Positions 12,480-34,766 of a stretch of 64,000 nucleotides of DNA are shown one piece after another (within the stretch, counting starts at the first letter, position 1; every line of letters begins with the position of its first letter). A model generated the notes under the pieces. That model had not been told where the DNA came from. It worked only from the letters and a program-made list of their open reading frames with translations, and did no database searches. This stretch comes from Lytechinus pictus. Its lineage: Eukaryota. Both the position numbers and the translations under genes were made by a program. The DNA lies in the NCBI RefSeq assembly GCF_037042905.1, contig NC_087255.1, positions 21,018,001-21,082,000 of the forward strand. Direction: 5' to 3'.

Positions 12480-12646
12480 CACTCTAAAAAAAAGTATATC
12501 AAGGAGATAAAAAGTGATATCTCCTTGAAACTTACCCTTTAAACTTGCATTTTGCCCAATATTGGGGAAAAATTACACAGCACACATGCTTGTTCCCTTT
12601 CTACCCAATAATTGTGTAAATGTTTTACTCTTCTTTTTTTAGAGTG
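12480..12646. mobile_element. CAC..GTG MITE, 2-bp TSD (TG)
   Basis: CACTCTAAAAAAA at both ends in inverted orientation. Confidence 0.75.
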
Positions 12647-15600
12647 TGATCGAGGCTGTATTCCATTTTAATGGACGTTTCCTTATTATTGTTAGAACGG
12701 AAGGAAAGAAAATAATATAGGGCCTATAGGCCTATATGTATATGCGTATACATACCAGATGAAGGAAGGATATTTAAGAGGAAATTCCATGTCGACTTCC
12801 CCGCGTCTGTCTCAATGATCCTTTCCCCCCCAAAAAAAGAAAAAAAAAATGGAAAGCAAAAAGTACAAATGTTTTTTATAATGCACCACCGTCGCAGGCC
12901 GTGGTTGGCGTGGGTGGGGGCACGCACTCGTCACAGGGGCAACTTGCCCCTCCTCCATTGTGGGTAATCCACCGCTTTATGTTCTAACTAATCGAGAAAG
13001 TGCTGTCTACTATTTTTGTAATTATGCCTACTCATGCACTGGTCCTTTTGAAATGAATGATCAAAGTAAAGAACAATTGATTTTGTTCAAGTGCATATTA
13101 ACAAAATTAATTTGTAGGAAATTAGGAGACATTTTTTCAATGTACATGAAACCTATGTGTCCTTGTATGACGATGCATTTAAAAATAAATAATTTCTTTG
13201 GGTGTGTCCTATAGGCCAACACCAATATCGAAGGCGAAATGGGCGTTTATAAACACCAAAATCAAAAGGGGGAAGGGAGCAAAATAGGGAGTTGTTTACA
13301 TCGGGTGGGGCACATTATCATACAATTCGACTCATCAGCCGCAATATATGGTCATCTTGAATTGAATAACAAGACCTTGAGATTTGTTTAGCGTGAGTAT
13401 GAGTCATCATAAAACTCCAACATCACGGAAAGGGATGCCCTCTTCGTGCTATTAATAAGCGCTGACACATCGACCACCATTATTAGTCATACCAATACAA
13501 CCAGCCGTGTATAGCTAGGCGGCACGTTGAAAACAACAACAAAATGCACAGCTCTACACACACAGTGGATGTGTGTGTGTAGTAACCTTCGGTGCGCTTG
13601 GCCAAATTTCGTCTGGAAGCATACCATTTGATTTTGTTGCCTGTATAGGCTGTATTCTGTCTGCGGGCTATGCACTATGCGTGCAATACAATACCACATT
13701 CCTTCATAAATACACAATGGATGAAGAAAAAAAAACGGCACTCTTTGACATGTAGGGGTCTATGTACAGCAGCATAGTCTGGTCGCTGACGCGGCCAGTA
13801 TAGAGTAACTGAAGTTGAAGAAAATGTATTAACACCATTAATTTGGGGCATATATTCATTACAATTTACAAACATATATATCGCAATGCAAAATAGGCCG
13901 AAAGGTGTTGGAAACTCCTTACCAATCCCTGATTTAAACCTCGGATTTATTTTGTTGGGGTTTTGTCAATTGAAAAAAAATCTGAATACTAATAAAAACC
14001 TAGCGTAAGAATGTGTAACTAGCGTATCAAAATAGAGGCCTATGTAGTCTCCAATTAAATATTTGGCCGAGTATATCAATATTCCATGTGAACATATATG
14101 AACATGAACTAAATATTCCGGGTGTTTTCCCCACTATTATAGGAGCAATGAGGTTTAACATCCTTTTCACTTCATCATAAAGGTACCATTGATCATTCGT
14201 CATTATATTTATTTTCACTTCATGACGGAGTGTCATCTGCATGCCTTCGTATATGCGTCCTGAACCATTTCATTCTGAGAAGGCCTATATTCGAATTCTC
14301 TAAGGGCCAATTTTCAGGTTAATAATTGACCAATAAAAGAAAAAGAAGAGAAGATCTCCCTAATTATATATGCACGCCAATATTCACAGGCAGTGTGTGT
14401 ACTACGGTATTTCGTCTCGAGCAAATACAGTTTGTGTGTGCCTAACGTGTCAACGTACAATGTGATAGTCTACTTTCTGCGGACATGTTGTTATCAAGTT
14501 CTTTGAGTTCGCATATAAAATCATACAGCGGGAAAATTTGATCATTTGTATAATACAGATCACAGTCTATTGATATTAGATGAATATCAATGGCAAATCT
14601 ATAAACCTATCCAATCATAAATTAATATTTATAAATGTTTGATTTGATTTTGATATAGGCCCAAAGAATATTACAATTGATACACACTCATGAATGGTTT
14701 ATGTAAGTCTGAAATAATTCAAAGAATAATATTTGTTACATGTCAAAAGTGACATGCTGCGATTTTTAAAAGAAACTATCATAAATCTTTAAAATGAACA
14801 AACATTGTAAACTTCTATAATATAGTAAGTATATAGGCAAGGCATACTGAGGCAAGGCCTAAGCCCATATCAGACGTACTGAAGTCAAATATACTTTGCA
14901 ATTTACCATAAAATTCCCGATCAATTTTTTTTAAGGCTGTTCTTTTGCAAATAATCAGTGATGTCTTCGATTGAGAAGAGCTTTCCGTTCTCTTTCGTTA
15001 ACCCCCCCCCCCTTTTTTTTTTTATTCATGCACCTCCAGAAATTTTAACACCTCCACCATAGACCTATTAGAGCATAGCTCTATGCCTCCACTAATAATA
15101 TCCCATTTGACTATTAAAAAGGGACAAAGAAAAAAATCGGGATGTAGGTCTGTAACTGGAAAATGATTAGACGAATTGTTATGACTCTTGAATTTTTTTA
15201 AAGAAATGAAATACAATTGTATTCAATTAAAAAAAAATGATTGTCAAATGATACACTAAAAATGGAATGTGTAGATAGAAGTATGTTTGCAAAGACTAGC
15301 ATATCAGTTCAAAATGAGGACCGAGTGTGCATGCGGGGAATACCACCTGTCCCTGGGGGAATTGCATTACCCTTTGAATATTCTACACTCCTAATTATTT
15401 CAAGTGTCTCCCCCCGCATATATTTATGTGCATGGCTCGTGTTCAATCTAAAACATTACCCCCACACAAAATTGGACGTGAGCAATGCATGGGGAGGGTT
15501 CAGGACTGTCGAATATGGGGTTTCGAAAGACTCCCAACCGCGGTATTATAATTGGGTCCGGGAAGGAATATTCTGCAGGGTATGCGGTGGTATAATGTGA

Positions 15601-16417: not shown

Positions 16418-17057
16418 GATTATATAGGCTTATATATGTACGTGATCATTCACGTGCCTATATTTCACCTGCACCTGTACTGTACTCATTTTTACCAGGA
16501 CCCGAGGAAGGGATGACTCATCAATCAAGGGAAAACACCCTGAAAATTTTCCATGCTTCATCAGCGGATGGACTGGGGTTCCCCCGCAGCCAGACGGCTT
16601 CTACTAATGCACCGGTATTGATCCAGCCTTTTTTTTTTCACATCCCTCGGTCTTCATGCATATGGAGTGTTCAGCGCATTGCATTTTGAATTGGTCATGA
16701 ATAAAGCGTATGGGTACATTAAAGGGAATAATGGAAATTTGCTTTAAAATTTTGTGCTAAGATGACTAAAATCTTCTTGGTATTTGACTCTTATCTGGAC
16801 AGCATATAGGCCATTAATGTAGGCCTACTATTTGTGGTTAAAATACCAATAGGTCTTATATAAGTCATGTATATAGATGTTCAATATCATTAATCGGTAC
16901 ATATACATTCGACTTATAAAATGTCAACGAATGCGAAATATGTAGTTTTCATCATCACAATGAAGTACATTAAATTTCCTGAAACATAAGAAAAATACAG
17001 ACTCAAATAAAATGTTGACTTTGTGAATTATTTTGGCTTATACCATTATTATGAAAT

Positions 17058-17134
17058 ACTACTACTACTAATAATAATATAGGGTATTTATATTGCGCAC
17101 ATATCCACCTTGTTAGGTGCTCAAGGCGCTCCTA
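17058..17134 (-). mobile_element. 3' part and (TTA)n/(TAG)n tail of a tRNA-derived SINE split by the CACTA-like insertion
   Basis: Simple-repeat tail followed by sequence that continues seamlessly at 34520 (…CAAGGCGCTCC-TA-TATTACCCGGCT…). Confidence 0.8.
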
Positions 17135-18212
17135 CACTCTAAAAAAAACCTCTTCATTTTTTAATAGAATCTATTCAGATTTGAATAGAAAACCTCTTCC
17201 GAGGGACACTTACAAGGTTCTCTTCAAAATGAAGAGGAAAATCTATTCAAATAAATGAATATGTATTCTATTCAAAGTTAAATAGTTTTCCTATTCAAGA
17301 ATGAATAGAATCCTATTAAAAATGAATAGAATCAGTTTCATCCTCTTGTTAAATTGGAATATACCCTATTCAAAGTTAAATAGTATTCCTATTCAAGAAT
17401 GAGTAGTCTTTCTATTCAAGAATGAATAGAATCCTGTTCAAAATGAATAGAATCATTGTCATACACACATAAAGAAAACAGGAGAATCATCAGTGTTAGC
17501 TTTCACATATAACACATTTTATTGCAACACCAAATTCAGGAATTGGTAACATTAACAATATAAAAAACATAACAAATTATAGAAAGGTATATTACATAAG
17601 TAAAAACAAAAGAAAGTCACATATTCACTATCAAGACATGATCTATGAACATTATGTTTATTATGTAGTGTAAGACAATAATTCCTGCACAGTAGTCATG
17701 GGATGATAAGTTGAAGTTATCCAATTTTAAAAAGTTTTTTCTGTAAATGATAAAACTTCAAGCATCCCCCCCCCCCCTCAGGTTCATTTCTATATATGAC
17801 GAAAGAGCTCTGTTTGATAACACTATACCCCTCTTCTCCAAGTACGAAAACCCTACTGCCCCAGGCATGCAATGTAAGTATCAAAACACCTGTTTCTTGA
17901 CCTCGGTCCGAAGATAACACAACAGCCCGAGTGCGGTCCGGGAAAACATGTCGCCATTTTTTATTCACTTACTTTCCTTATTTCGAGGTTGATTTTCTTT
18001 GTTCGAAACTGAAAATGGGCTAGCATTGAATTTCTGAATACAATATGCCTTTGAAAACGTGATTAAATATCGAATACAATAATTTAATTCCGAAGGTCCT
18101 TCTACAGGCAGAGAAGACTTACGTAATAGCACAGCTGTTGTTATCATTTCGTCCTTGGCTCAACGCTCATAATCTGGCCTGTGGGGATTACCTGGCCAAG
18201 CGGGGTGATCAG

Positions 18213-18349
18213 GCGGGTGTTTCATAAAGCTGTTCGTAAGTTAAGAGCGACTGGTGATCATGTCTTGCGGTAAATGGTACAATTGGCGATGATCACCAGT
18301 CGTTGTTAAAGTCGCTCTTAACTTACGAACAGCTTTATGAAACGACCCC
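18213..18349. mobile_element. Palindromic Harbinger-like MITE, CAG TSD (half copy at about 28755-28816)
   Basis: Long TIR GTTTCATAAAGCTGTTCGTAAGTTAAGAGCGACT; CAG at 18210-12 and 18350-52. Confidence 0.85.
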
Positions 18350-18657
18350 CAGGGCTTGGAAATGATGTTTTAGATTTTCAAACGCAAAATGGGGTGAAAT
18401 ACCGCAGTTTGCAATCCGAACTGCGGTCCGTTCCCAAACGGGGGTAAGACGTAATTGGCAATAGACATCCTGATAGCATACATGTAAGAACATGCAGCTC
18501 AGATTTTTAAAATTGAACACCATGTTGACCAATGCCTTTAAGCCATTGTAAAGCTTTCTCATAGTAAGAATTGTTTCCACAAAAATAGGGTTTGCAATTC
18601 TCGAGCTACATCTGGTATACAAAGCATTCACAGCTCTAGGTTAACATCTCCTTTTAA

Positions 18658-19252
18658 AGGGCAAGTCGACCCCAACAAAAAGTTCATTTGAATCAAAAGA
18701 AAAAAAATTAAACAAGCATAACGCTGAAAATTTCATCAAAATCAGATTTGAAATAAAAAAGTTATGAAATTTTAAAGTTTGCTTAATTTCACAAAACAGT
18801 TATATGCACATCCTGGTCAGCATGGACCGATGACGTCACCCACTCACTATTTCTTTTGTATTTTATTATATGAAATATAGAATATTTTCAAATTTTGTAG
18901 TTTTGTCAATAAGGGAGCTCTTTGTTTAATTGCAGTATGTTGCAGAAGTGGATTCCCCACATGTAGGAAGGAGTCAAGCCCTTTTAAAACTTGTAATATA
19001 GAAAAAAATTACGATATTTCATATTTCATATAATAAAAATACAAAAGAAATAGCGAGTGGATGACCACATCAGTTCCCTCATTTGCATACTGACCAGGAT
19101 GTGCATATAACTGTTTTGTGAAATTATGCGAAACTTTAAAATGTCATAACTTTCTTATTTTAAATCCAATGTTGATGAAATTTTCAGCGTTATGCTGGTT
19201 TGATATTTCTCTTTTTATTCAAATCATCTTTTTGTTGTGGTGGACTTGCCCT
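18658..19252. mobile_element. Kolobok-like MITE, TTAA TSD (copy 1)
   Basis: TTAA|AGGGCAAGTC...GACTTGCCCT|TTAA; long imperfect TIRs; homologous to 37582-38158 and 45705-46297. Confidence 0.85.
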
Positions 19253-21401
19253 TTAAGGACAAAGGAATAGGTTGTATAAAGTTACATGCTTGAGATTAGC
19301 TAAAACCAGATTTTGCATTTTTTAAATGTTAAAATGATAAATTTTAATGTTAAAATTTTAAAATTTTTTAAATGTTAAAATGTTAAAAGTTTGAGATATT
19401 TTTTTCTGAGGCGGCGACAAAATCGAACGGTTTCTCTGGTTTGAGTCCTGATTTACTGGCATTCAACAGCTGCATTTTTAAAAGTGTCTTTAAATTTAGA
19501 ATTTATGGTTTCTCTTTGGTGTGAGCAATACAAACTTTCAATTGCCATCCTGAGAAATTTGTAATCTACTTCTCATGAAGAACCCATCCAGGGTTGTTTG
19601 ATTTAAATCATGTCGATTTAAATCATGATTTAAATCATGTGAGTTTTTCAAAAAAAATCACTGATTTGGCCTGAATATGAATATCAATGTCATTTTTAGG
19701 TTTTCAGATAATTTGCTTTAAGATGCATATCTCATTTTTCTAAAAAAAAAGAGGTGATATTTTGAGACAGCGCATAAAACATGCTAAATTTTTGTTTTGG
19801 TTGCCCTACCTCCTTAAAAATACAACTTGAATGACTTACCCACTTGACTTCACAAGTAGGGGTTTGGGTGCAAGAACATTATTGCACAAGAAAATTGTTG
19901 ACATTTGTGATTGATTTTCACCCTTAATTCACTGAACTTGACCAATCTGAAAAAAAAAAATCTGTATCTATACATCTGTACAACAATTTCAAGCAATATT
20001 GTGAGATTTTTAGAAAACAAAAATTTCTTTTGAACTTGCCAGTTATGAGAATGGTCCAATACTCGCTTCTTTAATACTTCCAGCCCAATTTTCAAATGAA
20101 AACAAGTTTTGTCTACTTATGCTGGTAAACAAAACTTGTTACTTTTGGTTGCATTCTTTCTTTAAATGTTGGCATTTGCACAATGTGCTTGCCTCCACAT
20201 TTCTCTCTGTTATTTCATGTTATTTACCTATTTATGATAAATACTTCTAAAGCTACAAAAACCCTAACACATATATACAACCCAGTAGGCTACGCACTTT
20301 AACCTCTTTACCTTGTTTCTATATATAGGCTGTTATTGCTGGCACTGAGGTACCGCTGTCTTTTCCCTGCCCAGTAAAAAATCCCAAACATGTTGGCACT
20401 GACAAGCATCAGTTTTTAAAAGATAAATCACATAAATGTGTTGCGAAAAGATATGCCTTCCTACACTTTTTATAATCTTATATCCGAGTAGATATTCATA
20501 CGTAGTGATATTTAACATAATACGAAGTTTGAACTTCAACACTAGTTAATAAGTTTTACGCTAATCTTCTGCAGACAGAGGTGCTGTGATACCTGTCTAC
20601 AACTGGTATGACATCATACAAAAAACAATATGTACATCTTTTCAATTTTCTTTTACCCAAGGGGCCAGGTGGAGCAACATTGTAATGTTTTCATGATGTA
20701 ATCTTTTATGATGTTATACCAGATGAGGTTGCCGTTTTTAGACAGGTATCACTGCGCTAATATGTTGGACTAGTGAAAATGTTCCAGGTGAGCGTAGTAC
20801 TTATGTAGTACTTGTTGAAGTTTAAACTTTCATCAGGCTTTTTCATTTGAGGCGTACAAGTTCGATAGCACACCTAAAATAGTCTTGAGGTGTGCGATTT
20901 TCAGCACACCTAAATTTGGTAAAATTATACACAGTTAGATACAAAATGCACACCTACAGCATACCTGAATATATTGAGAAGTAGTGTTTGTAGCACAACA
21001 TTCATTTCTCAAAAGAAAAAGCCTACTTTCATATCATTCTTCTACTTTGTTTTCTACAAGACGCGTTACTGCTGGCATTGAGGTACCTCTGCCTTTCCCC
21101 TGCCACAGTGTGTATACATTCGTTTGCAATTAAGAAATCCCAAACATTATGGCACTGAAATTAAAATTAGACAAATCAATGCACTCCTACTTTGATGTTG
21201 GTTGTAATTGCTGTCTGGTTAAGAAAGTATCAACAAATCACTAACTGTGAGTGCATGGATTTGTCTTCACAAATGATGCAAGTTATTTACCTATCAAAGA
21301 TTACCACTTCTTAAAGCTACAAAAATCAGAACACTATAGGTACATCCATTAGGCTTAAATACACCAATTCACCTAAATGTGTTGTACAAACATATGCCTC
21401 C

Positions 21402-21728
21402 CTAAACTTCTTTTACCTTGTTTTCTAGATAGGTTTTGAGAAGTGTTACTGCTGGAACTGAGGTACCTCTACCTTTCACCTGCCCAAGTTTGTAAACATT
21501 CTTCTGCAGAAAGTCCCAAACATGTTGACATTGCCAAGCATAATCCATATCAAGGATATACACTAGTTTCATGCATATATCAATTCCTTTCAGGAGACTT
21601 GTACATGGGATGGTGCTATTTTCCACAACAACAAACACTTGTTCTGGTTTGTCAATTTCACCTTGAATTAACACAAACGGTTGTGTTTGAGTCTTCTGGT
21701 CCAAGAAGCCTGGTATGTTTGTACCAAT
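21402..21728 (-). CDS. Transposon gene terminal exon G (IGTNIPGFLDQ...QPFVLIQG...GIDICMKLVYILDMDYAWQCQHVWDFLQKNVY...KVKEV*)
   Basis: catatgcag| acceptor; 109 codons to TAG; corresponds to ORF 21402..21785. Confidence 0.82.
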   Translation of the reverse strand: MGTNIPGFLDQKTQTQPFVLIQGEIDKPEQVFVVVENSTIPCTSLLKGIDICMKLVYILDMDYAWQCQHVWDFLQKNVYKLGQVKGRGTSVPAVTLLKTYLENKVKEV

Positions 21729-22075
21729 CTGCATATGAAATACAAATAAAATTGGTGACAAGTGAGATAGCAGAACCATCCACAAATGAAGGAGGGAATA
21801 TTTAGTGCATCATTTCAATCTTAGTAAAACAGGCAAATGTAGTGAGGGTTGTGAAGCGGAGGGCTATACTGAATGCCAGACTAAGTTCTGATAAATGCAG
21901 GGAAATACAGCCAGCAGCTATACATGCCAATATTCGTTGAACTCAATTCTCACTGAAACATATTTTCCTCCAGAACAGTTTTCAAAGAAATTTTTTTAAA
22001 AATTAATTTCTCAGGTTTTTTAGTAATCACTACGGAACAGTACTATCATTTGTAATGTACGTCCATCCATTATGA

Positions 22076-22313
22076 CAGGCGCGGATACGGGGGGGGGGGG
22101 GGGGCGAGCGGGGGAAAAAAGGGAGTGATAACCTTTTTTTTTTTCTTGTAAGATTTCAAAAAGGAGTAATAAAGACTTTTTTTTTTGCTTGTCAGATTTC
22201 AAAAAGGAGTGATAAGCTTTTTCTTTCTTTTTTTTTTGCTTGTCGGGTTTCAAATTATTGTCAGAAAATTTTCCCAGTTTGAACCCCCCCCAGAAATCCT
22301 GGATCCGCGCCTG
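22076..22313. mobile_element. hAT-like MITE in an intron of the transposon gene
   Basis: TIR CAGGCGCGGAT / ATCCGCGCCTG; TSD CATTATGA / CGTTATGA. Confidence 0.85.
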
Positions 22314-23242
22314 CGTTATGAGACGATATATGACAGGCAAAACAATTAATTCTATCTTTTATTCTCATTCTCAGTCACAAATTTGAGTAATTTTCAAACC
22401 AAAGATGATGTCAACACCCCCCCCCAAAAAAAAAAAACATTTTTATTTAAAAATGTACACCCCTATTCAAACATACAATATTCCAAACCAAGTAGAGCAG
22501 TTCGCGTTTAGTTATAATGTGTAGCTTCACTGTGTTGACCGCTAAATGCACTGTCATATATTGTCTCATAATGGATAGCTTCATATTCCTATAGGATTAC
22601 AAACGCACTCATTTACTAGGAATAATAATTAAGGCTGATTTACAGAGCAAAACCTTTTCAAACATTGACAGGTTGACACCAGCCTTAAAACTGATTATTT
22701 TTTCTGTGAAGATTCAAAATAAACACGTCTGTTTGCAGATTTTTCTGACGGATCCACGTTTTCAAATGTCAAATTTTGGGGGTTAAAAAAGACGAAAATT
22801 CACCCACACACACACACTATGCGTCTCAGACGTGTAAATACCCTTGCTGCCACAATTGCTTAGTTTTTGTGTCATATAGCTGATTTAACTGACTCAAACT
22901 TATAGAGCACTATAGCGGGCTTGTCAAATTATTTAAATTTTACTATAAAAAATTCCATCCAGAAAGGAGTTTACTGCAGTTTCTTTCACAAAATGTCATA
23001 TTTTTGTCTAGGCTTTCATGGAGTCATAGGAGTGCCCCAGATATACTGTAGGAGAGCCGTTTTCTACTTTTTGCCCAGGTGCTACAACCCTTTGCAATGA
23101 GCCACTGTGTGTTTTATGTAATATCACTAAAATAATCTCAGTCCTGTCCTTTTAATAGCAGGCTCTGGGTATTTGTTTAATTTCTGCTTGATCTGTCTGA
23201 AACAGTGTGTGCCAAATAGTAAAAATAAAATTTGTTCCTCAC

Positions 23243-23377
23243 CTCTTTGCGCTGCACGAATGCCTTGCGGGCTTCATCCATCGTTGAAGAACCACTTCTC
23301 CCTTTTGCCCCTTTCTAGCTTTCCCGGTGGAAACAGCATAGGCAACACCTGCAGAGATAAGTTTACCTCCTGTTCAT
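23243..23377 (-). CDS. Transposon gene exon F (DEQEVNLSLQVLPMLFPPGKLERGKR / frameshift / SGSSTMDEARKAFVQRKE)
   Basis: gtttcag| ... GAG|gtgagg; 135 bp. One extra base near AAAAGGGAGAAG (about 23296-23312) leads to an in-frame TGA, and removing it restores phase 0 with exon G. Confidence 0.65.
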
Positions 23378-24864
23378 CTGAAACATAGGAGACAAGATAC
23401 AACTACATTTGTAAGTTTCTAAATTATAGTTCTTCCAAATGTTTATTTTCTCTCAAACTCACATCAAAGTCACATCTGTACAAGAACAATTTATGCCGCA
23501 GCATAGCAAGAGTAAATTGCTCATCAACCAGTTATGGGAGCGTGTTGTGAATCAAACAAGTGCATATGAAAGCGCGTACAGACGCCGCAAACGTGACATG
23601 ATAGCAACGGCAAAAACACCTGCAGAGAAGTAAACTCCAGGACAGACTAAGATTAATTTGTGCTCATTTTATCACATCTAACCTGAGATTAAAGTTAAGT
23701 ACAGATGTGCAGCCCGAACACCCAAAATTTCCAACAACCACCCTTTGATGAGTAAACCTAAGAAGATGCAAATTTGCAACCCATGTGTTAACCATTTACT
23801 TTTGTTGCTTTTGGAAGGGGCCTTTTTAAAACTAATCAGTGTTTTTTAATACCAAGTAAATTGGAATGCAAATAAGTACTTTTTGACAATATATCGGTAA
23901 ACCAAAGAAAAATTCCTCAAAAATTAATATGTACACCAATTTTTAAAAAAGGGGCCATAGGTAAACAAGAGAGGCCAAAAAGGACCCTATTCGGGCCACA
24001 CATCCCCGTACCCACCCTTTTACTAAGACCCCCTTCCCAGCATCAAACACGGGCTTTGTCCTCCATTCATATCACACAATTTCAAATTGGAGATAAAGAG
24101 GTGGTTATCAAATACGACTCAACACCAGTGAATGAGACTATAATATCATTGGTTATATTATAGTCTTAGGTGGGTGAGAATGATGTTGGCAGAGGTCAAA
24201 TTAGAGTTATCTTGAAATAGCAAATTTTTTACAAAAATTTTCATCCTTCAATACTAAAATCACTGTACATGTCAGTAGCATAAATTTAAGATCCCAATAT
24301 TGGCGTAGAGATGATAAAAATCGATCTGCATGTCAAATTTTGATGAAAATGACTTTAAAAAAGATTTTGTTGTTGCTAATTAATTCAGATTTTGTTCTGA
24401 CAAACTTTTGCATTTCAATTTGCAAATATTATGTCCTACATGTACAATGAACTTACTGAACCTTGCAACTTACATGAACATGATCTGTAATCTTGTATTG
24501 AAAGCAATTAATGTATTTATGCTCTCCTGAACATTTCACTTTTTTGTTGAGATATAAGGCTTTTATCATCTCAGCAATGATATGATGAAGGAAGCAAGTT
24601 TTCGTACGACAAAGTAAATGAATTAATAATAATATTCATATTTAAAAGAAACAAATACTTTTCCAGACATATTTGTAGTTTATTACTATTACTGCAAATT
24701 GTAAAAAATGTTGGTATAGTTCACATCGCTCTAATTAATTAACATTAACATTAATCCCACTTACTGAAATGGGACAATCATAGTCTGGATTATCAGGTTT
24801 TCACCAAGCTATTATAATACATACATGTAGAATGGATTTCAAATTGCATATTCACTACTGTAGG

Positions 24865-25008
24865 CAGGGCCTTAGTTAGAATTTTGGAGTTGCCCCTCAT
24901 TTTTGAAAGAGTGCCTGTCCAAAATGGGCTGAATTTGTATAAAATGTTCATTACTTGCCCGTCAAAAAGGGAAGTTACCTGTCAAAGTGACGGGCATGGC
25001 ATGGCCTG
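24865..25008. mobile_element. hAT-like MITE, 8-bp TSD
   Basis: ACTGTAGG duplicated at 24857-64 and 25009-16; CAGG..CCTG ends. Confidence 0.75.
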
Positions 25009-25059
25009 ACTGTAGGTTTGAAAGAAGAGTGAAGCTGTTAGACATAAGCACCATTTTAC

Positions 25060-25207
25060 CTGTTTCAACAGCACCTTTGAAGTTAAGGTATAGCCTCCAA
25101 TCCACCTGCTTTTCAGCATAGTTCAGGACATGTCTGCAAAATTTCGGCCATGTGAGGAATAACTTATCTGCTGATTGTGGGAAAAGAATTCGGAAATCCT
25201 GGTCAAC
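25060..25207 (-). CDS. Transposon gene exon E (VDQDFRILFPQSADKLFLTWPKFCRHVLNYAEKQVDWRLYLNFKGAVET)
   Basis: ttatacag| ... CAG|gtaaaa; 148 bp, phase 0 to 1. Confidence 0.8.
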
Positions 25208-25683
25208 CTGTATAAAGACAAAGTTAAAATCGAATAGTTTTATGTTTTGTCATTAGTATAAAGAAAACCTGTTTTGTACATTCTATTTGCTCTATTAAAG
25301 TGGAAACTACAAGAATTACATATACATAAAATTGAATAATTTACTAAGCTGACTGGTCAAAAAATGGCTCTGCAAAAAATTTGAACGCAGGGAGCTAAAA
25401 AGTGTATAAGTTGTGAACTGTGAGAGCTGTGATATTTTGCCACCCTATGTAGACACCCCTATTTTTTTCACATCACATTACAGAACTGTGCCATCGTCTT
25501 AGAAATGCAAGCTGGCCTGAAGGAAAAACCTGAAAATGTGAATGAATCTGGGCTTTTAAAAGCCTTCAAAACGGGCTGAAATTAGATAAAAGTGCAAGAT
25601 CAAGCTGGAAATCATAAATTAAAAAAGCAGGAATTACTGCAAAAGCAGGAAGACTTTACTAGTCAGTACCATTGAAAACTTAC

Positions 25684-25868
25684 CATTCCTTCTGTGTCAA
25701 TTAAACGTGGAAACAACAGTAAAAGCTCTTGCACAGGTTTGTCCTTATTGTCTCTAATGTAGCCTGCCCTCGCCTTACAGGTATCCCTCATCCATGATCG
25801 AACTTGTTGCCTTGGCTCTTTGTGGTCCTGAAGCCACTTTATTTTTGCATCTACTTCCTCATCTCTAT
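25684..25868 (-). CDS. Transposon gene exon D (DRDEEVDAKIKWLQDHKEPRQQVRSWMRDTCKARAGYI...LLLFPRLIDTEGM)
   Basis: atttag| ... ATG|gtaagt; 185 bp, phase 1 to 0. Confidence 0.8.
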
Positions 25869-26753
25869 CTAAATATGCAAATAAATTCAGGGAGTTAATG
25901 CATTATGCCTTTTTAGTTTATTTATAAGTCATGACAGTCACAAGCAAATGTTCCATTTCACCTGATGACAGTAAAAAATTAACACAAGAAATAAAACATG
26001 TGGGCAGGCTGTGACAATTGGTTGCCTGATTGCCCTGGGCAATCATTTTTTGGTTTGGGCAACAATGATTAATATCAAATCGTAAGTTAGCTTGCATCAA
26101 TGTTATCACTTAAGTTACACACATCCAAAAATTATACATGTCTTAAATAGTTACAAACCATAAACATATTCTGACTTTTAACTTTGCACAGACCGTTTTG
26201 TTATGCGGCTTGTTAGCAAGGTCAAGCAGTTTTAAGGCCAAGCTTGCCTGACCAGGCAATCAAGTGAAGAAAAAATCGTCGCAGCCTGCATGATGCACGC
26301 TCAACCCCCAGGCTCATACACTGTAATGTGCATGGTGCTGAATAGATGAAGCATGTGAAGCCTTAAAGCACTAGGAGTTTATTTGTTAAGATGTCAAGAA
26401 TTAACCACTTCCCTGAATATTTCTTGACTGATTTCACTATTTTGTACAAACAAAAAGGGTACAGAAAAAAAGGAAGGAACTTGTGGCGCAGATCTCCAAA
26501 ATATCATTCAGATCGATACGAAAAATTGCCTCATTTTCGTTACAGCGCAACTAATTTGTATATTCAGATGTCGCTTGAATGTGTCAGCATGATTGCTTAA
26601 ACCCACTTTTTAAAAGACACTATACACATGCATGGGTATTATTTGAGACTAATTCTGTGTATGCTTCCCTGGCAGACACAAATACCCCTATTAGATCTCC
26701 ATGACCAATTAACTAAGGTTATGTAATGTTCAGTTGTTATATTTCTTCCTTAC

Positions 26754-26922
26754 CTGACGACAGATCCAGGTCTTCTGTATTAGGCAAGTTTGCTTGCACT
26801 TTCTTGTTGCTTTCTTTTGGCGTTCTGGCAGGATCACGATATCTGACGTTCCTTAGCCGCATTTCAATGTAACCTGATGAATCTTTTGTTTTGTTTTGGC
26901 TTGCTGGAGTGAACCAGGTCAA
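26754..26922 (-). CDS. Transposon gene exon C (LTWFTPASQ...SSGYIEMRLRNVRYRD...DLSS)
   Basis: tttaaag| ... CAG|gtaagg; 169 bp, phase 0 to 1. Confidence 0.8.
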
Positions 26923-27349
26923 CTTTAAAGTAAAAGAGTAAAAAAAGTAAAACAAAACTATTGAATTTTAGAAGTAGAGATCACTGTTCATAAGAATTTG
27001 TATTACCCTTTGGGGTAACTGTACGGTCAATCAGATTTACCTTAATAAAGGCTTGCCCAATCTGAGACAATAACGTACTTTCAATGATTTAAGCATTTAG
27101 ACTTTCAGTTGTATCAAGTTTCATCCACTTTTGTCTGGTTGAGTAAATAATAACCTGCTGCAGATAACGTGTTCAGGGGGTCATTTAGCATTAGCTGATA
27201 TTAAGTATAAACAATGGTTATCTTGGTCATCATGAGCCTAAAGTCAATGATGAACATGGCTTGTAAATGGGTGATCCTATCTTTAACAAGTAACAATGTT
27301 ACACACAATTTATCTAGCCATGAACTAACATAATGAACTCAAAACTTAC

Positions 27350-27434
27350 GTAAGCATCATGATCATCATTGTCCAACGCAGGAAACTGGGTAACAATGCA
27401 TTTTGCCATTGCCAATTTTTGCTCTGTTTTAGGC
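27350..27434 (-). CDS. Transposon gene exon B (WPKTEQKLAMAKCIVTQFPALDNDDHDAY)
   Basis: ctaaag| ... TAC|gtaagt; 85 bp, phase 2 to 0. Confidence 0.78.
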
Positions 27435-28299
27435 CTTTAGAAAAATGAAAATTGAATGTTTAAGAATATTGTTTTAAAAGGCTATATATATTAGAGATTA
27501 AATGCAATTCTTTGCAGGGAATAAATTACCTAGTATCGCATCGCAATTTGCTTTGCTTTTTTGCAGGGCTGCTACACAAAATTTACTTTGTGTCACAATT
27601 TTTTTTCCATGGGATTGTACATAATTTGTTTTAAATATTTTCCCATCTCCAAAAATTTCTAATCAAATCTGGGAAGCAAAATTATTCCCTGCTTTGAATT
27701 GTAGTCTGATGAATTTCTGCTTCATTGGTGATCTGCTTTGAGAATATCCTTTATATAGCAAAATTTTGATCCACCCATTTTCTGATTTTAGTAATTCCAA
27801 ACTCCCATCCTTTAATAAAGCAGACAAACAGTGCAAGGTGTATGTATCACACCAAACTATTTCCAAGCACCTGCATAATACACATGTAATGTCAGCTCAT
27901 TGCATGTATTTGTTATGTAAATGTGATAAACAATTCAAAAGCTGTGTTTAAATATCAACACACAAGTTTCAATTATGCCATGAAAATGTAAAAAAATATA
28001 AATTTATGTGAAATTTGTTAGATAAGATTACATGTATACAATTTTTATACCAAGTGTCTGGTTATTTCTGGTATGCAATGCACCAGTTAAGTTGATAATT
28101 AACTTTTGTGTCATCTACAAGAGAAAGGGATTGCTTTTGAAATGGTATGTATGTGTCTGTGGTCAAACTTTTAATCCTTGACATCTATTTGATCACTGGA
28201 GTCAATTGGTAAGGCAAATAAGCAAATAAACTACCACATAGTATAGCACATCTAAATACGCTAGCATTTCCTTTTTCTGCTCATAGGATTTTAGCTTAC

Positions 28300-28439
28300 C
28301 ACTTTGTATATGTCTCTATCAGGTGTGAGACCAATGTGTTCACTATCAATTTTCGTGAATTGTAGCTGATGCACCCTTCCTCCATCTCCTTTATAAGCTC
28401 CTCCCCCTCTCTCCGTTTGGACAAGATGGCTCGTATGTC
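28300..28439 (-). CDS. Transposon gene exon A (DIRAILSKRREGEELIKEMEEGCISYNSRKLIVNTLVSHLIETYTK)
   Basis: ctgcag| ... TG|gtaagc; 140 bp, phase 0 to 2. Confidence 0.75.
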
Positions 28440-31400
28440 CTGCAGATCAGAAGTGATTACAAAGAAAGGTCATAAGTGGATGCTTTAAGTGATCCATGTA
28501 TGTGCCGGGGCCTTCACATCTAGAATATGAGAGAGATACTATAGGAACAGGAACAAACAAGGAGCCTAGCTAGTACATTTTTTTTCTTCATTTTGCGCCA
28601 ACAATCGTTAAATGTGGTACCATCATCCAAATCGATAGTTTCTGGGATTGTTTTCATACCTTTTTTTTAAATTAATTTCATATTTTTCTAAAAAACAGCC
28701 AACATGTTCTTAGGTCATAATTCAATTACATAGGGATATCACAGAGCACAAGAAAGGATCACCAGTCGTTCGTAAAGTCATTCGTATCTTACGAACAGCT
28801 TTATGAAACACCCACCAGGTGACTTCAAACTTTTTGATCATCAAAATGTCATTTTAATACTCCTTGGGTATAAATTTTTCTAAAATTTAACTCTTGGGCG
28901 ATTATGAGACACATTTCTTTTTTATTTAAATTTTTTCCCCTCAAATAGAGCTCAAACTAAATTTCTATCTGATTTAATTTGACATGATAGACTAGAGCTG
29001 AATTAAGAAGCACTCATACAGGAATGTTAATTATTTGTCTCTGGAGACATAAGAACATTTATAAGATGGAAACTATCCCCTCTAATTTCATAATTTTTTC
29101 GATTTTGAGAAAACCATTAGAGTGGTGGGTTTGTATGTTGCTGCTGTTTCTACAACATAAAAAATCAATAGGTGTGGGTAAAAAATACAGTTGTCTATAA
29201 GGCAAGGGCAATAATGGAACTTGTAAACATAAAACTGGCAACGAGTTCTCAAGCTTTAAAATGGGCCAAAAATTAGTTTAAAAAAATCAGTTCTTTGAGC
29301 CCCTATTTTGGTGCCTTTCCATTCTTTAAGCCCCTATTTTCAGCCCTGCGAATCTCACACCCATACCAAAACAAAAGTTTAGTACCCCTCCCCCCCCCCC
29401 CCCCGATCGATATTTGCTCTTGGAACCAAATTATGTCTCACATATATGAAATTCTTGTAGGCCTACATGGCATTATAAGCTTAGTGTTCAAAAATAAAAA
29501 TTCCAGGGGAATTCGTCCCCTCCCCCCCCCCCCCCCCTTAGTACTGCCACTGCTGAAAAATGTCTCTGGAGTGGCTTCTGACATGACTTGCCGCGATAAA
29601 TTGCTCTGACTTAACCCATTTTAGATGTGCCACTGAGCGAAATCATGCACGCTCGCTTTAAAAGACAATATCTGATCTGATTTTGTAGGCACACAATATT
29701 TCATTTCCAGTAATTTTTCAACAAACCCCCCCCCAAAAAAAAAAAAACACATTTTAAGGCCAAGTAAAACAAAAAAAAATGGTTCTCTTCTGGTTTTTGG
29801 AAAAATAGGAGGGGCTCTTTGTTTTTTATTGAATTAATTTCTGAATACCTACGGTTTATAGCACTATATTTTCAATATGCGGTGCCCCCCAAAAAGATGG
29901 AGGCCTTTTTATTTTCTTGTTTCAAACATCTTTATAAAACAAGTTATATGGCCTTGGGAATTAAAGTTCCGGGGAGGGGAGGTAGTAGACTTGCATCTTT
30001 TTGAAATCACACAGGGCTTTATTTTTGTTCATTATCAGATCACTTATATAATATTCTGAGAAAATAAAAAAGTCCTGAATACAAAGTCTGTTGCAATTAG
30101 AATTTGTTGAAATACATGTAAATATATGCAAATGTCTCTAATTTCCCCCCTCGATCGGATTTGTTCTTTTTTACTAGCCCTGACAATATACATATCGGTC
30201 ATATCAGACCAGCAAACTAAGCTAATTGCCTGACAGTGACTTTTACTGGTAAGGCCAAGTAAAATCAATTCCTAGTTTCTCGTCCGGATTTTTCGAAAAT
30301 GAGGAGGGGGTTCCATGTTATTTATTTGATATTTGATTTTTTTTAATACACAAAAATGCTATTGGGTCAACTTCAACACATTCTTCACAAATTTAGTAAC
30401 ACTTGTACTACACTACAGAGGATCGAAACAAGGTGTAATTGCATATTAATGTTTTTTGGTATATCATTGTCTAGAAGTCCTCATATTTTTATTCATATCA
30501 TTTCAGAACAAAAATATCAAATAACAAAGCAATTAAGGCGGCCCCAAAAAAAGGAAGGAGGGGACGAGAAAAAAAATTGAAATTATTTTTATTTGGCCTC
30601 ATCTGACCACCTGACAGGTGTGTGTCAAGCCCTTTTTTTGGGGGGGTGGTCTACATATGTGACCTACTATCTCAAAAGCCCACAATAAGTCACCTAAAAT
30701 GAGTTTTGAAATTTTCATTGTTGAAATTCCATTATTTTAATTATATTATTCTAGAATTTACAAGACGGCTGTGCCCTTAGCCTTTAGGTGTTGACATGCG
30801 TAGTCAGTCACAACTATGTCAACAGAGAGTTTCCTTTATGATAAAAATATTGAGGCCTAATCTTAAAGATCCATAATGCTTAGAAAATGTTTCGAATCGG
30901 CTACTCTTAAAATGTGGGATAATTCATCAAAGCACATAGTAATAAAGTACTAAAATCTACAAGAAAGGCCAACTGAGAAACTCTGATTTCTGAAACGAAT
31001 TGAAATAAAATCACAGGTTTCTGGTAGGCTTTGAGTTTCCCCCTCCTGCGCTAAGCGTGGAAGCTTTGAAATTTCCTGAAATCATTAGCAAAAGAAGACA
31101 ATCTTTGTTGTGATTCTACATCTGCCCTTTCCCTAACTTCTCTTACTTTTTCATTTTTTTTTCTCTCTCCCCCTTTCTCCCTCTCTCCTTTTTTTGTTTT
31201 TTTTTTGGGGGGTGACTGCCCCAACCCCCCCAGCTACATGCCTGGTAGTTATGACACTGATGGCTAGTTTTATCTCAATGTCAATCTTGACACTTTGCCA
31301 AAGACTCTCTTTGCATGCATATAATATAGGCCTAGGCCTACATAAAAAAACTAGAAATATCACTATCAGTGATTAATAATACTACCCCCGCCAGCAGCGC

Positions 31401-31569
31401 TCTACCTACATAAAAAATAATATCCCACTATAATAACCCCAAAAAGAAAAGAAAAAATGAAATATTTTGAAGTCTATCAGTTAGGGCAAAAACTATGCAT
31501 CATCAGATATATCAAAGAATGACATTTCACTGAGAATCCAATCAACAGTGCAACCTTCTTTTTTTTTAA

Positions 31570-32442
31570 CTATTAGGCCTATATCTTGCACTTCTTCATA
31601 TCACTATGGACCCATGCACCGAATTTCAAATCAATTGGTCAAAAAATGAGGGAGTAGTATGATCCACAAGATTTTTGCACCAATTTTATTTTAAAATGTT
31701 GTTGCCATGGCAACGCAATTCTCGACTTTGACGAAAATTATATCTTGCACTTATATTTTATACACATCAATATGGACTTAATGTTCCAAATTTCAAATTA
31801 ATTGGTCCTTAACTGAGGGAGTAGTATGATCCACAAAAATTTTGCACAAATTTCATTCAAAAAATGCTGTTGCCATGGCAACACGATTCTCGACTCTGAC
31901 GAAAAATATATCTTGAATTTTTATACATCATTATGGACCTATGTAAGCCTACTAGCCTAATTAAAAATTCAGGTCAATTGATCAAAAACTGAGGAAGGAG
32001 TTAGATCCACAAATTTTTTGCATGAATTTCATTCAAAAAATGCTGTTGCCACGCGGCAACGCAATTCTCAACTTTGATGAACAATATATCTTGCACTTCT
32101 ATACATCATTATGGACCTATGTAGGCCTACTAAATTTCAGGTCAATTGATCAAAAACTGAGGGAGGAGTTAGATCCACAAGATTTTTGCATGAATTTCAC
32201 TCAAAAAATGCTGTTGCCATGGCAACGCATTTCCCGACTTTGACGAAAAATATATCTTGCACTTCTACATATCATTATGGACCCATGTATTAAATTTCAA
32301 GTCAATTGATCAAAAACTGAGGGAGTTTGATCCACAAGATTCTGCAACGGACCGCCCGCCCGCCCGGCCACACGGTGATTCCTATATAGGGCCTAGGCCT
32401 ACCCCCTTACAGTTACACACCTTGTGTGTGGCGGGGGTATAA
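31570..32442 (+). mobile_element. Helentron/HINE(DINE-1)-like element with a roughly 170-bp tandem array (about 4.5 units)
   Basis: Units recur at 168/176/168 bp spacing, followed by (CCGC)n, GGTGATTCCTATATA and a terminal hairpin TACCCCC..ACACAC..GTGTGT..GGGGGTATAA. The classification rests on recalled HINE end architecture. Confidence 0.7.
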
Positions 32443-33593
32443 AAAATCAGTAGTAGGCCTAAGTTAGGCCTACTAGGCCTAGGCTATAGCTACCTTCAAG
32501 ACAGTGAAGCCATAACTTAGGCATTCATTGAAAAAAAATTGAATATCAAATACTAAAGTTAGGCCTAGGCCTAAACTAAGTTTGGGCCTAGGCTAGGCTA
32601 GGGCTAGGCCTTGATCTAGTCTAGCCTTGGCCTGGGTCAGGGCCCAGGCCTAGTATGAAATGAGGTTTGGAATAAAAATATGCTTCTTGACATTTTTGTG
32701 CATGAGATCGCTGAATACCTTAGCCTTCAGGGCCTATACAATCCACGCTTCATGAATATACTCGTAATGTAGATAGATCTAGGCCCCGCCGGGATCTAAC
32801 ACTATAACAGTTAGGCCTATAGCTAGGCCTACATGGGTCTGCCTTGTTTTGCCTTGCCTTGCTCAAGACGACTCGACATGCTATTGCTAACCATAACTTA
32901 CTAGGCCTAGTAGGCCTAAAGTTAGGCCTAATACTAGTTAGATAGGCCTAACGTTAGACCTAAGGTAGGCCTAGCCTAGCCCAACTTCCAAGCCTAACTT
33001 ACTCGAGTTCCATTTGCTGTCTTATGACTGAGACTGCTAGTGCTAGCCGCGAGACCAGGGCCAGGGCCAGGCCCAGGGGTGAACATCATAAAACAACATC
33101 AATTCCAGACTAATCATTGTGCAAACTGCATGCAGACTGTCGAATGCAGTAGGCTAAGGCTAAGCTACCGTACATCAATCATATTCATAACGTATGTGCA
33201 TCGAGTAGCATCGCAGTGATCGTACATGACATTTTGTGAGTTGCATTGACATTTTGTGAGTTGCATTTTGACCGAAAATCGTATGATGGCACTGTTGCAG
33301 ATACAAGAAATTTGTTCAAGAGAATAGAGCATATTAATACATATAAAAATAAAACTACTTCACCGACAAAATCATGTAATATCTTACAGATTAAACTGGA
33401 TAACTTACCGCGGTATACACTCATGATATGGCGACTGATTTCAAATGATCGTCTGCGCTGCGCTGCGCTAGCTGCGCGCGCGGCCGGCGCGGTGACGTCA
33501 GTCAACAAGTTTGACCAATGAAATGTTTCATCGAAGACAACGTCATTTTGAAGAGAATACGTATCAAAAATTTTCAGCATCCACGTCATTTTG

Positions 33594-34182
33594 TCGGGGG
33601 GGGGGGGGGGGGGGGCACTCAACTTTGGGTTTGGTAGGGATGTGCGGCCCCGGTTTCTGAAACGGGGGACAGGTATAACCGAGTTGACTCTGAAAAGGAG
33701 ATCTATAACCGAAGTGACCTTAAAAGCAGTGGCGGCACCAGGATTTTTAAGGGGGGGGGGGGCAAATAGGGGGCAAAACAAAATGTGGGGGGGGGGGCAA
33801 TGCCGGACAAAAAAACCCTCCCTTTTCTTTTCTTTCTCATTTTCAACCCTTTAATTTTTCACTCCGAAAATTATTGGGGGCAACTTGGAGGGGGGGGGGG
33901 GCCGGGCAAAGCTTCTGACGGGGGGGGGGGGGTCAAATGCCGTTTGAAGTTGAGAGCTATTTTTTGTCAATTGCTCTGGAAGCAAAAAAATCTGAAATTT
34001 GCTTAAAATGGCCGGGGGTCTAGATATTAAATTTCCCCCAAAAGGGATTAAGAATTTTCAAAAAGGGCTTGTGAACTAAATATTGTGCTTGAATTTATAT
34101 GGGGTCTACGGAGCGGCAGGCAATTAAGGCGTGAAGAGGGTGTTTGCGGCGGCACATTTTTTAGGTCAGTACGTGCCCCGGG
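33594..34182. mobile_element. CCCGGG-type DNA element with 7-bp TSD, nested near the CACTA right end
   Basis: CATTTTG at 33587-33593 and 34183-34189; ends TCGGGGG / CCCCGGG; contains a CAGTGGCG hAT-like end at about 33727. Confidence 0.7.
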
Positions 34183-34517
34183 CATTTTGTCATTCAAAAG
34201 GGAACGATTCTCTATTTTCATTAAATAGTCTTCTATTCAAAATATTTGACAAGGAAATCTTTTTGTTATTGTCATTCAAAATGAAACGATTCTTTTCATT
34301 TTAAATAGTTTTCTAATCATTTTGAACAGTTTTCTATTCAAAATATTTGACAAGGAAATCTTTTTATCTTTGTCATTCAAAATGAAACGATTCTTTTTCA
34401 TTTTGAACAGTTTTCTAATCATTTTGAATAGAAAACTATTCATTTTGAATAGTTTTCTATTCGAAAATATTTGACAAGGAAATCTTTTCAGAATTTGAAG
34501 AGGTTATTTTAAGAGTG

Positions 34518-34692
34518 TATATTACCCGGCTAAGCTAGGCGTTCATAGCGCACACAGCTTTTTAAGGAATTACTTCCTACCGGTACCCATTTACCTCACC
34601 TGGGTTGAGTGCAGCACATTGTGGAACAGTTTCTTGCCGAAGGAAATTACGCCATGGCTGGGATTCGAACCCACGACCCTCTGTTTCAAAGT
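34518..34692 (-). mobile_element. 5'/central part of the split SINE
   Basis: The reverse complement contains B box GGTTCGAATCC and aligns by eye with the SINE at 1483-1757 (AAACAGAGGGTCGTGGGTTC..CCATGGCG..GTGCTGCACTC..CCCAGGTGAGGT). Confidence 0.85.
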
Positions 34693-34766
34693 AATAGGGG
34701 GCCTAATTCAGAATATATTATAATTCAGAATATATTATAATATATTCTGAATTAGGCCCCCTATTA
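34692..34766. repeat. 58-bp perfect palindrome with a 17-bp internal duplication
   Basis: TAATAGGGGGCCTAATTCAGAATATATTATAA[TTCAGAATATATTATAA]TATATTCTGAATTAGGCCCCCTATTA. Confidence 0.9.

What the first reader, a model, noticed from the sequence alone, without database searches (positions are those of the whole stretch)
17135..34517. 17.4-kb CACTA/EnSpm-like element that splits a SINE and carries a spliced gene but no transposase
Seen: 22-bp TIRs, a TA duplication and subterminal CTATTCAA repeats at both ends. The flanks rejoin into a single SINE, which fixes both boundaries to the base. Inside are a 7-exon gene, a promoter-like region and at least 7 nested elements. I could not recognise any DDE transposase exon. 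Established: plant CACTA elements encode a transposase plus an accessory protein, and animal EnSpm-type elements have CAC..GTG ends with 2-bp TSDs. Inference: this is a large accessory-gene-only derivative mobilised in trans, inserted about 6.5 kb downstream of the jun stop codon.
Basis: partly seen in the sequence, partly recalled or inferred. Interest (0 to 1): 0.85.

Follow-up and report, generated by a model that had tools for sequence, protein, structure and literature searches.

The report
Deleted copy of giant sea-urchin transposon
This 17.4-kb stretch is a real, very young DNA transposon of the CACTA/EnSpm kind in the sea urchin Lytechinus pictus: a copy that lost its transposase and the front of its second gene in one 6.3-kb internal deletion and was then moved by intact 23-kb sister elements, which is the classic autonomous/non-autonomous pattern and not a new kind of element.

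Summary
Window 17135-34517 has 22-bp terminal inverted repeats (TIRs) matching at 20 of 22 positions, CAC...GTG ends, a TA duplication and dense CTATTCA repeats at both ends. Contigs of other SINE copies read straight across the insertion point, so both ends are fixed to the base.

The genome is Lytechinus pictus (GCA_037042905.1). It holds sister copies with identical TIRs and other flanks. Four complete copies are 22.8-23.1 kb. Each carries a 10-exon, 551-aa SAM-domain gene with an intronless 837-aa transposase in intron 2; the transposase is intact in two.

The window copy is 98.7-99.7% identical to them but lacks 6,341 bp: the transposase and exons 1-3. A copy on another scaffold has the same deletion junction, different flanks and its own TA duplication. 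So the deleted form transposed after the deletion, necessarily with transposase supplied in trans.

The "7-exon gene" is exons 4-10 of the accessory gene. It also has a private +1 frameshift (23317-23318) and a premature stop (23276-23274), and it matches RefSeq's 258-aa model exactly. Only one insertion (17796-18458) is private to this copy.

Earlier first-reader notes of this scan report two-gene CACTA elements elsewhere in this genome. Verdict: new member of a known kind.

The parts
17058..17134 (-). Tail-side half of the interrupted SINE. It ends in the left copy of the TA duplication (17133-17134).
   Evidence: Very high word depth at 17064-17157. Contigs of other SINE copies run through 17134 into the sequence of the right flank. 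A related SINE copy lies at 1520-1760.
17135..17156 (+). Left TIR. This is the 3' end of the element relative to its genes.
   Evidence: The same 22-mer sits at the corresponding end of L003-L010.
17160..17460 (.). Left subterminal array of CTATTCA/TGAATAG motifs, about 21-23 bp apart.
   Evidence: 12 motifs in 400 bp against 0.12 per kb inside the element. Tandem arrays reported.
17796..18458 (.). 663-bp insertion private to this copy; it replaces 3 bp. It contains a small inverted-repeat element at 18212-18350.
   Evidence: Absent from L003 and from L004-L007. Its left part has high repeat depth in reads.
18654..19256 (.). 603-bp palindromic MITE-like repeat, shared with the sister copies.
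   Evidence: Inverted repeats I1-I3. Copies at 37578-38162 and 45700-46303.
21402..21728 (-). Accessory-gene exon 10 (last exon, conserved C-terminal domain). It is out of frame in this copy.
   Evidence: 653 related representative proteins.
23243..23377 (-). Accessory-gene exon 9. A private +1 frameshift at 23317-23318 leads to a premature TGA at 23276-23274.
   Evidence: Only exon difference from L002. L002's frame is the one conserved in the family. Position of the stop codon.
25060..25207 (-). Accessory-gene exon 8.
25684..25868 (-). Accessory-gene exon 7.
26754..26922 (-). Accessory-gene exon 6.
27350..27434 (-). Accessory-gene exon 5.
28300..28439 (-). Accessory-gene exon 4, now the first exon left. 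RefSeq's 258-aa model starts at the internal ATG at 28385.
   Evidence: The spliced translation equals P0296 exactly.
28701..28707 (.). Junction of the 6,341-bp internal deletion. The missing segment holds the transposase gene, accessory exons 1-3 and 469 bp upstream of the accessory start codon.
   Evidence: The two alignments to L002 abut here. L002 7600-13940 is missing, with 2 nt of microhomology. The same junction is present in L004.
31580..32325 (.). 168-bp tandem repeat (4.5 copies) inside the element.
   Evidence: Also present in L002.
33001..33750 (.). CpG-rich patch (CpG observed/expected 1.1-1.2) about 0.8-1.5 kb inside the gene-upstream end. It is a candidate promoter or control region and was not tested.
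34190..34495 (.). Right subterminal motif array, including a 101-bp repeat present twice.
34496..34517 (-). Right TIR. This is the 5' end of the element relative to its genes.
   Evidence: The identical 22-mer is in L002-L007 and L009.
34518..34703 (-). Right copy of the TA duplication (34518-34519), followed by the tRNA-like head half of the SINE.

Best explanation
Window 17135-34517 is a non-autonomous internal-deletion derivative of a young family of CMC-superfamily (CACTA/EnSpm-like) cut-and-paste transposons, about 23 kb long, in Lytechinus pictus.

The autonomous form has 22-bp CACTC TIRs and arrays of CTATTCA motifs at both ends. It carries two same-strand genes: a 10-exon SAM-domain accessory gene (551 aa) and an intronless 837-aa DDE transposase inside intron 2 of that gene.

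One 6,341-bp deletion removed the transposase and accessory exons 1-3. Its 2-nt microhomology is the pattern expected from abortive gap repair (inferred). The deleted form kept both ends. Transposase made by intact sister copies then moved it to at least two loci. One of these is a TA inside a SINE, 6.5 kb downstream of jun.

After insertion this copy gained a 663-bp insertion and a frameshift in exon 9. Its 7-exon gene is therefore a remnant.

Shown here: the structure, the sister copies, the shared deletion and the target duplications. Inferred: the repair mechanism, present-day activity, and binding of the accessory protein to the subterminal motifs by analogy with maize TnpA.
For: Ends and the split SINE.

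Same assembly as the sister loci.

Sister copies with identical TIRs and different flanks. Target duplications are TA in the window, L004, L005, L006 and L009, CA in L003, and ATA or imperfect in L007.

Collinearity at 98.7-99.7% apart from one 6,341-bp gap.

L004 has the same junction, no flank similarity, and 5 further shared derived sites.

No transposase similarity anywhere in the window. Intact 837-aa ORFs in L003 and L007.

The 10-exon model reproduces RefSeq P0292 exactly and places the transposase in intron 2.

The window's spliced remnant equals RefSeq P0296, 258 aa.

Transposase alignment: invariant D401, C421-x2-C424, H628-x3-H632 and E652, and nearly invariant D307. These are the motifs published for this superfamily (PMC12730594).

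PF02992 is hit by 11 of 35 relatives.

Pairwise divergence among copies is 0.17-0.28%.

L009 is a second derivative with a different deletion.
Against: No excision, empty allele or new insertion was observed, so present-day mobility is inferred only.

The family's own transposase (P0176) does not reach Pfam Transposase_21 on its own.

The ends read CACTC, not CACTA.

Only two copies with this deletion were seen, because no whole-genome nucleotide search was available.
Confidence: 0.9

Rival explanations
1. A full-length autonomous element inserted here, and the 6.3-kb deletion happened afterwards in place. On this reading the copy was never mobilised in trans.
For: Internal deletions can arise in place. 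Only one other copy with the same junction was found.
Against: L004 has the same breakpoints to the base (L007-element 5766 joined to 12108), yet it has unrelated flanks and its own TA duplication. Two independent identical deletions are very unlikely.
Confidence: 0.04
2. The remnant gene is functional. From the internal ATG at 28385 it would make a truncated 258-aa protein that regulates the family, for example as a repressor, in the way truncated products of other transposons do.
For: RefSeq annotates exactly this 258-aa product. RNA-type runs of the same species hold all sampled words of exon 10, so some copy or copies of the family appear to be transcribed.
Against: The product lacks the SAM domain. 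It also lacks everything after residue 249, which includes the most conserved C-terminal block with the only invariant residues, D493 and K497. The frameshift is private to this copy. The 469 bp upstream of the normal start codon are deleted. The RNA words cannot be assigned to this copy.
Confidence: 0.08
3. The family is not EnSpm/CACTA proper. It would belong to another lineage of the same wider group with 2-bp, mostly TA, duplications, such as Mirage-like or ESTA-like elements.
For: The duplications are 2 bp and mostly TA. The ends are CACTC. P0176 itself misses PF02992. TA-duplicating EnSpm-like lineages have been described (PMC12730594).
Against: 11 of 35 close relatives hit Transposase_21. 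Animal CACTA elements with 2-bp duplications and Strongylocentrotus homologues were described in 2006 (PMC1636069). One copy has a CA duplication, so TA is not obligatory.
Confidence: 0.25

Closest known systems
Maize En/Spm and its deletion derivatives dSpm/I (CACTA superfamily)
   Same: CAC..GTG termini and short TIRs. Arrays of short subterminal motifs at both ends. Two element-encoded proteins: a transposase and an accessory protein. Non-autonomous copies arise by internal deletion and are moved in trans. (Background from PMC1636069 and general knowledge.)
   Different: The duplication is 2 bp, not 3 bp, and the ends read CACTC, not CACTA. The two proteins come from two nested genes, with the transposase ORF inside intron 2 of the accessory gene, and not from alternative splicing of one transcript. 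The accessory protein is SAM-domain/SAMD3-like and unrelated to TnpA. The element is about 23 kb long.
Animal CACTA elements (SmTRC1 of Schistosoma mansoni and relatives; PMC1636069)
   Same: Transposase related to the Transposase_21 family, 2-bp target duplications, and homologues reported in Strongylocentrotus.
   Different: The SmTRC1 TIRs start CCC. Its accessory products were reported as not conserved in other animals. Here the accessory protein belongs to a large family (653 representative clusters) that spans echinoderms, fish and brachiopods.
Vertebrate SAMD3 (accessory-gene side only)
   Same: The predicted structure of the 551-aa accessory protein aligns over its full length with human and mouse SAMD3 (Foldseek E 8e-13 and 2e-11). 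Both have an N-terminal SAM domain.
   Different: SAMD3 is a single-copy host gene with no TIRs or transposase nearby, as far as I know. Sequence identity is only 14-16%. The direction of descent was not tested.

Membership tests
CMC superfamily (CACTA/EnSpm-Mirage-Chapaev) | Termini 5'-CAC...GTG-3' (PMC4079192; CA..TG in PMC12730594) | tested here: met
   The window and seven sister loci begin CACTC and end GAGTG.
CMC superfamily (CACTA/EnSpm-Mirage-Chapaev) | Short target-site duplication of 2-5 bp (2 bp in animal CACTA; PMC1636069, PMC12730594) | tested here: met
   A 2-bp duplication in 6 of 7 complete copies (five TA, one CA). L007 fits 3 bp (ATA) or an imperfect 2 bp. The window's TA is confirmed against uninterrupted SINE copies.
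CMC superfamily (CACTA/EnSpm-Mirage-Chapaev) | [quoted passage not shown] | tested here: met
   For the family's autonomous copies: D401, C421xxC424, H628xxxH632 and E652 are invariant in 35 sequences, and D307 is nearly invariant. The window copy has no transposase at all.
CMC superfamily (CACTA/EnSpm-Mirage-Chapaev) | Match to Pfam Transposase_21 (PF02992, tnp2) | tested here: inconclusive
   P0176 gives no hit even at E<=10. 11 of 35 relatives hit it, best E 4.9e-07. P0011 scores E 7e-4, below the curated cut-off.
CACTA in the strict sense | CACTA pentanucleotide at the ends and a 3-bp duplication | tested here: not met
   The ends read CACTC and duplications are 2 bp in 6 of 7 copies.
Non-autonomous deletion derivative (dSpm-type) | Same ends as an autonomous element, collinear interior with an internal deletion, and no transposase | tested here: met
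Non-autonomous deletion derivative (dSpm-type) | Transposed after the deletion arose (the same junction at independent loci) | tested here: met
   The window and L004 share the junction, have unrelated flanks, and each has its own TA duplication.
Non-autonomous deletion derivative (dSpm-type) | Excision or mobilisation that depends on the autonomous element | not testable with these tools
   This needs a transposition assay or population presence/absence data.
Gene-capturing ('Pack'-type) transposon | The internal exons come from a host gene and not from the element's own genes | tested here: not met
   The seven exons are exons 4-10 of the family's own accessory gene, 99.65% identical to the autonomous copy.

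The most novel reading that the evidence does not exclude
The SAM-domain accessory gene of this transposon family shares ancestry with vertebrate SAMD3. SAMD3, whose function I know to be poorly understood, would then be a domesticated CACTA accessory gene. The accessory protein would work as the TnpA analogue: it binds the CTATTCA subterminal repeats and brings the two ends together by SAM-domain oligomerisation. Neither idea appeared in the literature I could search.
Probability: 0.35. Interest if true: 0.7.

Novelty: new member of a known kind. Interest (0 to 1): 0.42.

Why it matters
The element gives a base-exact, well-controlled example of the autonomous/non-autonomous transposon relationship in an animal. 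The family is so young (0.2% divergence, two intact transposase genes, several intact accessory genes) that it may still be active in L. pictus, a sea urchin used for genetics. It also flags RefSeq LOC129261372 as a transposon gene remnant and not a host gene. The wider point concerns the family more than this copy. The large 'SAMD3-like' group of uncharacterised animal proteins is the second gene of CACTA-type transposons, with the transposase nested in its intron. That bears on how these proteins are annotated and on the origin of SAMD3.

Tried and rejected
- Pfam on ten candidate exon and ORF pieces gave nothing.
- Rfam and tRNA scans of the window gave nothing, so the SINE head is not recognised as a tRNA.
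- The protein-atlas search gave only a weak SAMD3-like lead.
- The PDB sequence search with the accessory-protein profile gave nothing meaningful. The PDB fold search matched only the SAM domain.
- The only other SINE copy in the window (1520-1760) is of another subfamily and left a 1-nt ambiguity at the junction. The reads resolved it.
- The read-laying run could not span 17 kb, so no empty allele could be seen. Unique left-flank sequence is absent from runs X19-X21.
- Literature searches for a link between SAMD3 or SAM domains and CACTA/EnSpm found nothing relevant.
- Rejected readings: host-gene capture, deletion in place, and an intact 395-codon gene.
Full report
**Observation.** The stretch 17135-34517 begins with the 22-mer CACTCTAAAAAAAACCTCTTCA. 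It ends with the reverse complement of CACTCTTAAAATAACCTCTTCA, so 20 of 22 positions pair. With up to 3 mismatches the pattern occurs only at these two places in the 64-kb window, and none is expected in shuffles. TA lies directly outside each end. The heptamer CTATTCA (either strand) occurs 12 times in the first 400 bp and 5 times in the last 400 bp, against 2 times in the 16.6 kb between. These motifs form tandem arrays of about 21-23 bp.

**The split SINE.** The window holds only one other, divergent SINE copy (1520-1760). It left a 1-nt ambiguity at the junction. Laying Logan contigs of four public runs on 16500-17900 settled it. In each run, 24 to 144 contigs match the left SINE half up to 17134 and then continue with TATTACCCCGGCTAAGCTAG. 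This is the sequence that follows the second TA at 34520 onwards. The uninterrupted SINE therefore reads ...CTCCTA|TATTACCC.... The element sits exactly between the two halves, and the duplication is the dinucleotide TA.

**Where it comes from.** The jun ORF (41037-41972, minus strand) is found by exact look-up on CM073236.1 of assembly GCA_037042905.1. Proteins from the same assembly are named Lytechinus pictus by NCBI. The element ends 6.5 kb downstream of the jun stop codon, as stated.

**The gene.**
- The minus strand carries seven exons: 28439-28300, 27434-27350, 26922-26754, 25868-25684, 25207-25060, 23377-23243 and 21728-21402.
- The last exon has 653 related representative proteins at E<=0.001. 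None of the exons matches a Pfam family.
- Longer relatives show what the gene is. Two Holothuria gene models (P0011, P0151) fuse three parts in one prediction: an N-terminal SAM domain, a region with Transposase_21 similarity, and this C-terminal domain.
- That pointed to a transposon in which the transposase gene lies inside the accessory gene.

**No transposase here.** I collected 120 homologues of the transposase part and ran a sensitive tblastn against the whole window. The only hits below E 0.01 are the accessory exons, through the fused models.

**The autonomous sisters.**
- The L. pictus transposase P0176 (837 aa, intronless) lies on another chromosome (locus L002, extended as L007). 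It sits inside a 551-aa SAM-domain gene on the same strand.
- The window element aligns to L002 in two blocks: 28701-34517 at 98.7% and 20130-28707 at 99.65%. L002 has an extra 6,341 bp between the blocks (L002 7600-13940).
- I reconstructed the accessory gene in L002 as ten GT-AG exons whose translation equals RefSeq P0292 exactly. The transposase ORF (10001-12514) lies in intron 2 (9946-13254). Exons 1-3 (8069-8135, 9830-9945, 13255-13539) all lie in the segment missing from the window.
- The junction in the window is clean and has 2 nt of microhomology.
- Further look-ups gave complete sister elements L003, L005, L006 and L007 (22,779-23,086 bp). L004 (16,689 bp) and L009 (12,769 bp) are also complete but shortened by internal deletions, and L008 and L010 are partial loci.
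- Wherever an end is present in these loci it carries the same TIR 22-mer as the corresponding window end. The flanks are unrelated.
- Target duplications are TA in the window, L004, L005, L006 and L009. L003 has CA. L007 fits ATA or an imperfect 2 bp.
- The 837-aa transposase ORF is intact in L003 and L007 and broken in L005 and L006.
- Over 10.9 kb of shared sequence the copies differ by 0.17-0.28%.

**Mobilised in trans.**
- L004, on a different scaffold, has exactly the same deletion as the window copy: both join L007-element position 5766 to 12108.
- The flanks of L004 share no similarity with the window's flanks. The two copies also share five further derived sites.
- One deletion followed by transposition of the deleted form explains this. 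Because that form has no transposase, the enzyme came from elsewhere.
- L009 carries a different, larger deletion (4162 joined to 14418), so deletion derivatives arise repeatedly in this family.

**State of the gene in this copy.**
- Exons 1-3 are lost: 157 codons with the start codon and the SAM domain (PF00536 in P0272).
- The copy also differs from L002 in one exon position. At 23317-23318 it has CT where L002 has A, a +1 shift in exon 9.
- L002's frame is the one conserved across the family. The shifted frame stops at 23276-23274.
- Splicing the seven exons and translating from the internal ATG at 28385 gives exactly RefSeq XP_063963067.1 (P0296, 258 aa, LOC129261372).
- The product lacks the C-terminal block that holds the family's only invariant residues.
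- L004's annotated product (P0299, 377 aa) runs in frame to the normal C-terminus, so L004 lacks the frameshift.
- Exon 10 words are present in RNA-type runs of this species. With at least nine near-identical copies this says only that the family appears to be transcribed.

**Nested elements and promoter.**
- Only 17796-18458 (663 bp, replacing 3 bp) is private to the window copy.
- The 603-bp palindromic repeat at 18654-19256 has two other copies in the window, but the sister elements share it, so it predates the recent spread. The 168-bp tandem array at 31580-32325 is also shared.
- A CpG-rich patch at 33001-33750 (observed/expected 1.1-1.2) lies near the gene-upstream end and survives the deletion. 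It could be the control region. This is untested, and the 469 bp directly upstream of the accessory start codon are gone.

**Classification.**
- Animal CACTA elements with 2-bp duplications, and Strongylocentrotus homologues, were reported in 2006 (PMC1636069).
- The ends and duplications fit. In an alignment of 35 transposases, D401, C421xxC424, H628xxxH632 and E652 are invariant and D307 is nearly so.
- Pfam Transposase_21 is hit by 11 of 35 relatives but not by P0176 itself.
- The strict CACTA pentamer and the 3-bp duplication are not met.
- I therefore file the family in the CMC superfamily as EnSpm-like and leave the sub-lineage open.

**The accessory protein.** An AlphaFold model of P0272 is confident outside two linkers (mean pLDDT 80.8). 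In solved structures only the SAM domain finds matches. Among Swiss-Prot models the top hits, over the full length, are human and mouse SAMD3 (E 8e-13 and 2e-11). By analogy with maize TnpA, it may bind the subterminal motifs and pair the ends through SAM oligomerisation. This is inference only.

**Verdict.**
- This is the classic autonomous/non-autonomous relationship, here in a very young and possibly active 23-kb animal element.
- Unchecked first-reader notes of this scan had already flagged two-gene CACTA elements with a SAM-domain accessory gene elsewhere in this genome. I verified that architecture independently for this family.
- No paper in the searchable library links SAMD3-like genes to CACTA elements.

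Noticed in passing
L002:8069-21242 (same locus as L007); also L003, L005, L006: In the autonomous copies the intronless 837-aa transposase ORF starts only 55 bp after the end of accessory exon 2. It lies wholly inside intron 2 on the same strand. Gene predictors in other echinoderms fuse the two genes into one model (P0011, P0151).
   Followed up: yes
model md65894256a04 (P0272): The predicted structure of the accessory protein aligns over its full length with human and mouse SAMD3 (Foldseek E 8e-13 and 2e-11). SAMD3 may share ancestry with this transposon gene. No literature on such a link was found.
   Followed up: partly
L009:5222-17990: A second non-autonomous derivative of the same family (12,769 bp, TA duplication). 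Its deletion is different and larger (L007-element 4162 joined to 14418).
   Followed up: partly
window 17140-17589: A run labelled as a different organism (X1) holds a contig 95% identical to the left end of the element, with different sequence beyond 17589. The family, or a close relative, therefore exists in another species.
   Followed up: no
window 17130-17795: Small runs of the same species (X19-X21, kind unknown, possibly RNA) have contigs 100% identical to the left end of the element at depth 20-26. They show no depth on the unique flank, and the matches stop at 17774-17795, just before the private insertion begins at 17796. They probably derive from sister copies or transcripts.
   Followed up: no
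window 18654-19256, 37578-38162, 45700-46303: Three copies of a roughly 600-bp palindromic MITE-like repeat, 73-77% identical to each other.
   Followed up: partly
window 34692-34766: A 75-bp near-perfect palindrome directly beside the tRNA-like head of the interrupted SINE.
   Followed up: no
window 28762-28823 and 18205-18350; L002:7484-7663: The left breakpoint of the 6.3-kb deletion lies inside a small inverted-repeat (MITE-like) element that is nested in the autonomous copy. Another member of that repeat sits in the window's private insertion.
   Followed up: partly
window 21402-28439 (RefSeq LOC129261372): RefSeq annotates the transposon gene remnant as a 258-aa protein-coding gene. An older annotation of the same locus name gave 406 aa (P0301), read as if there were no frameshift.
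   Followed up: partly
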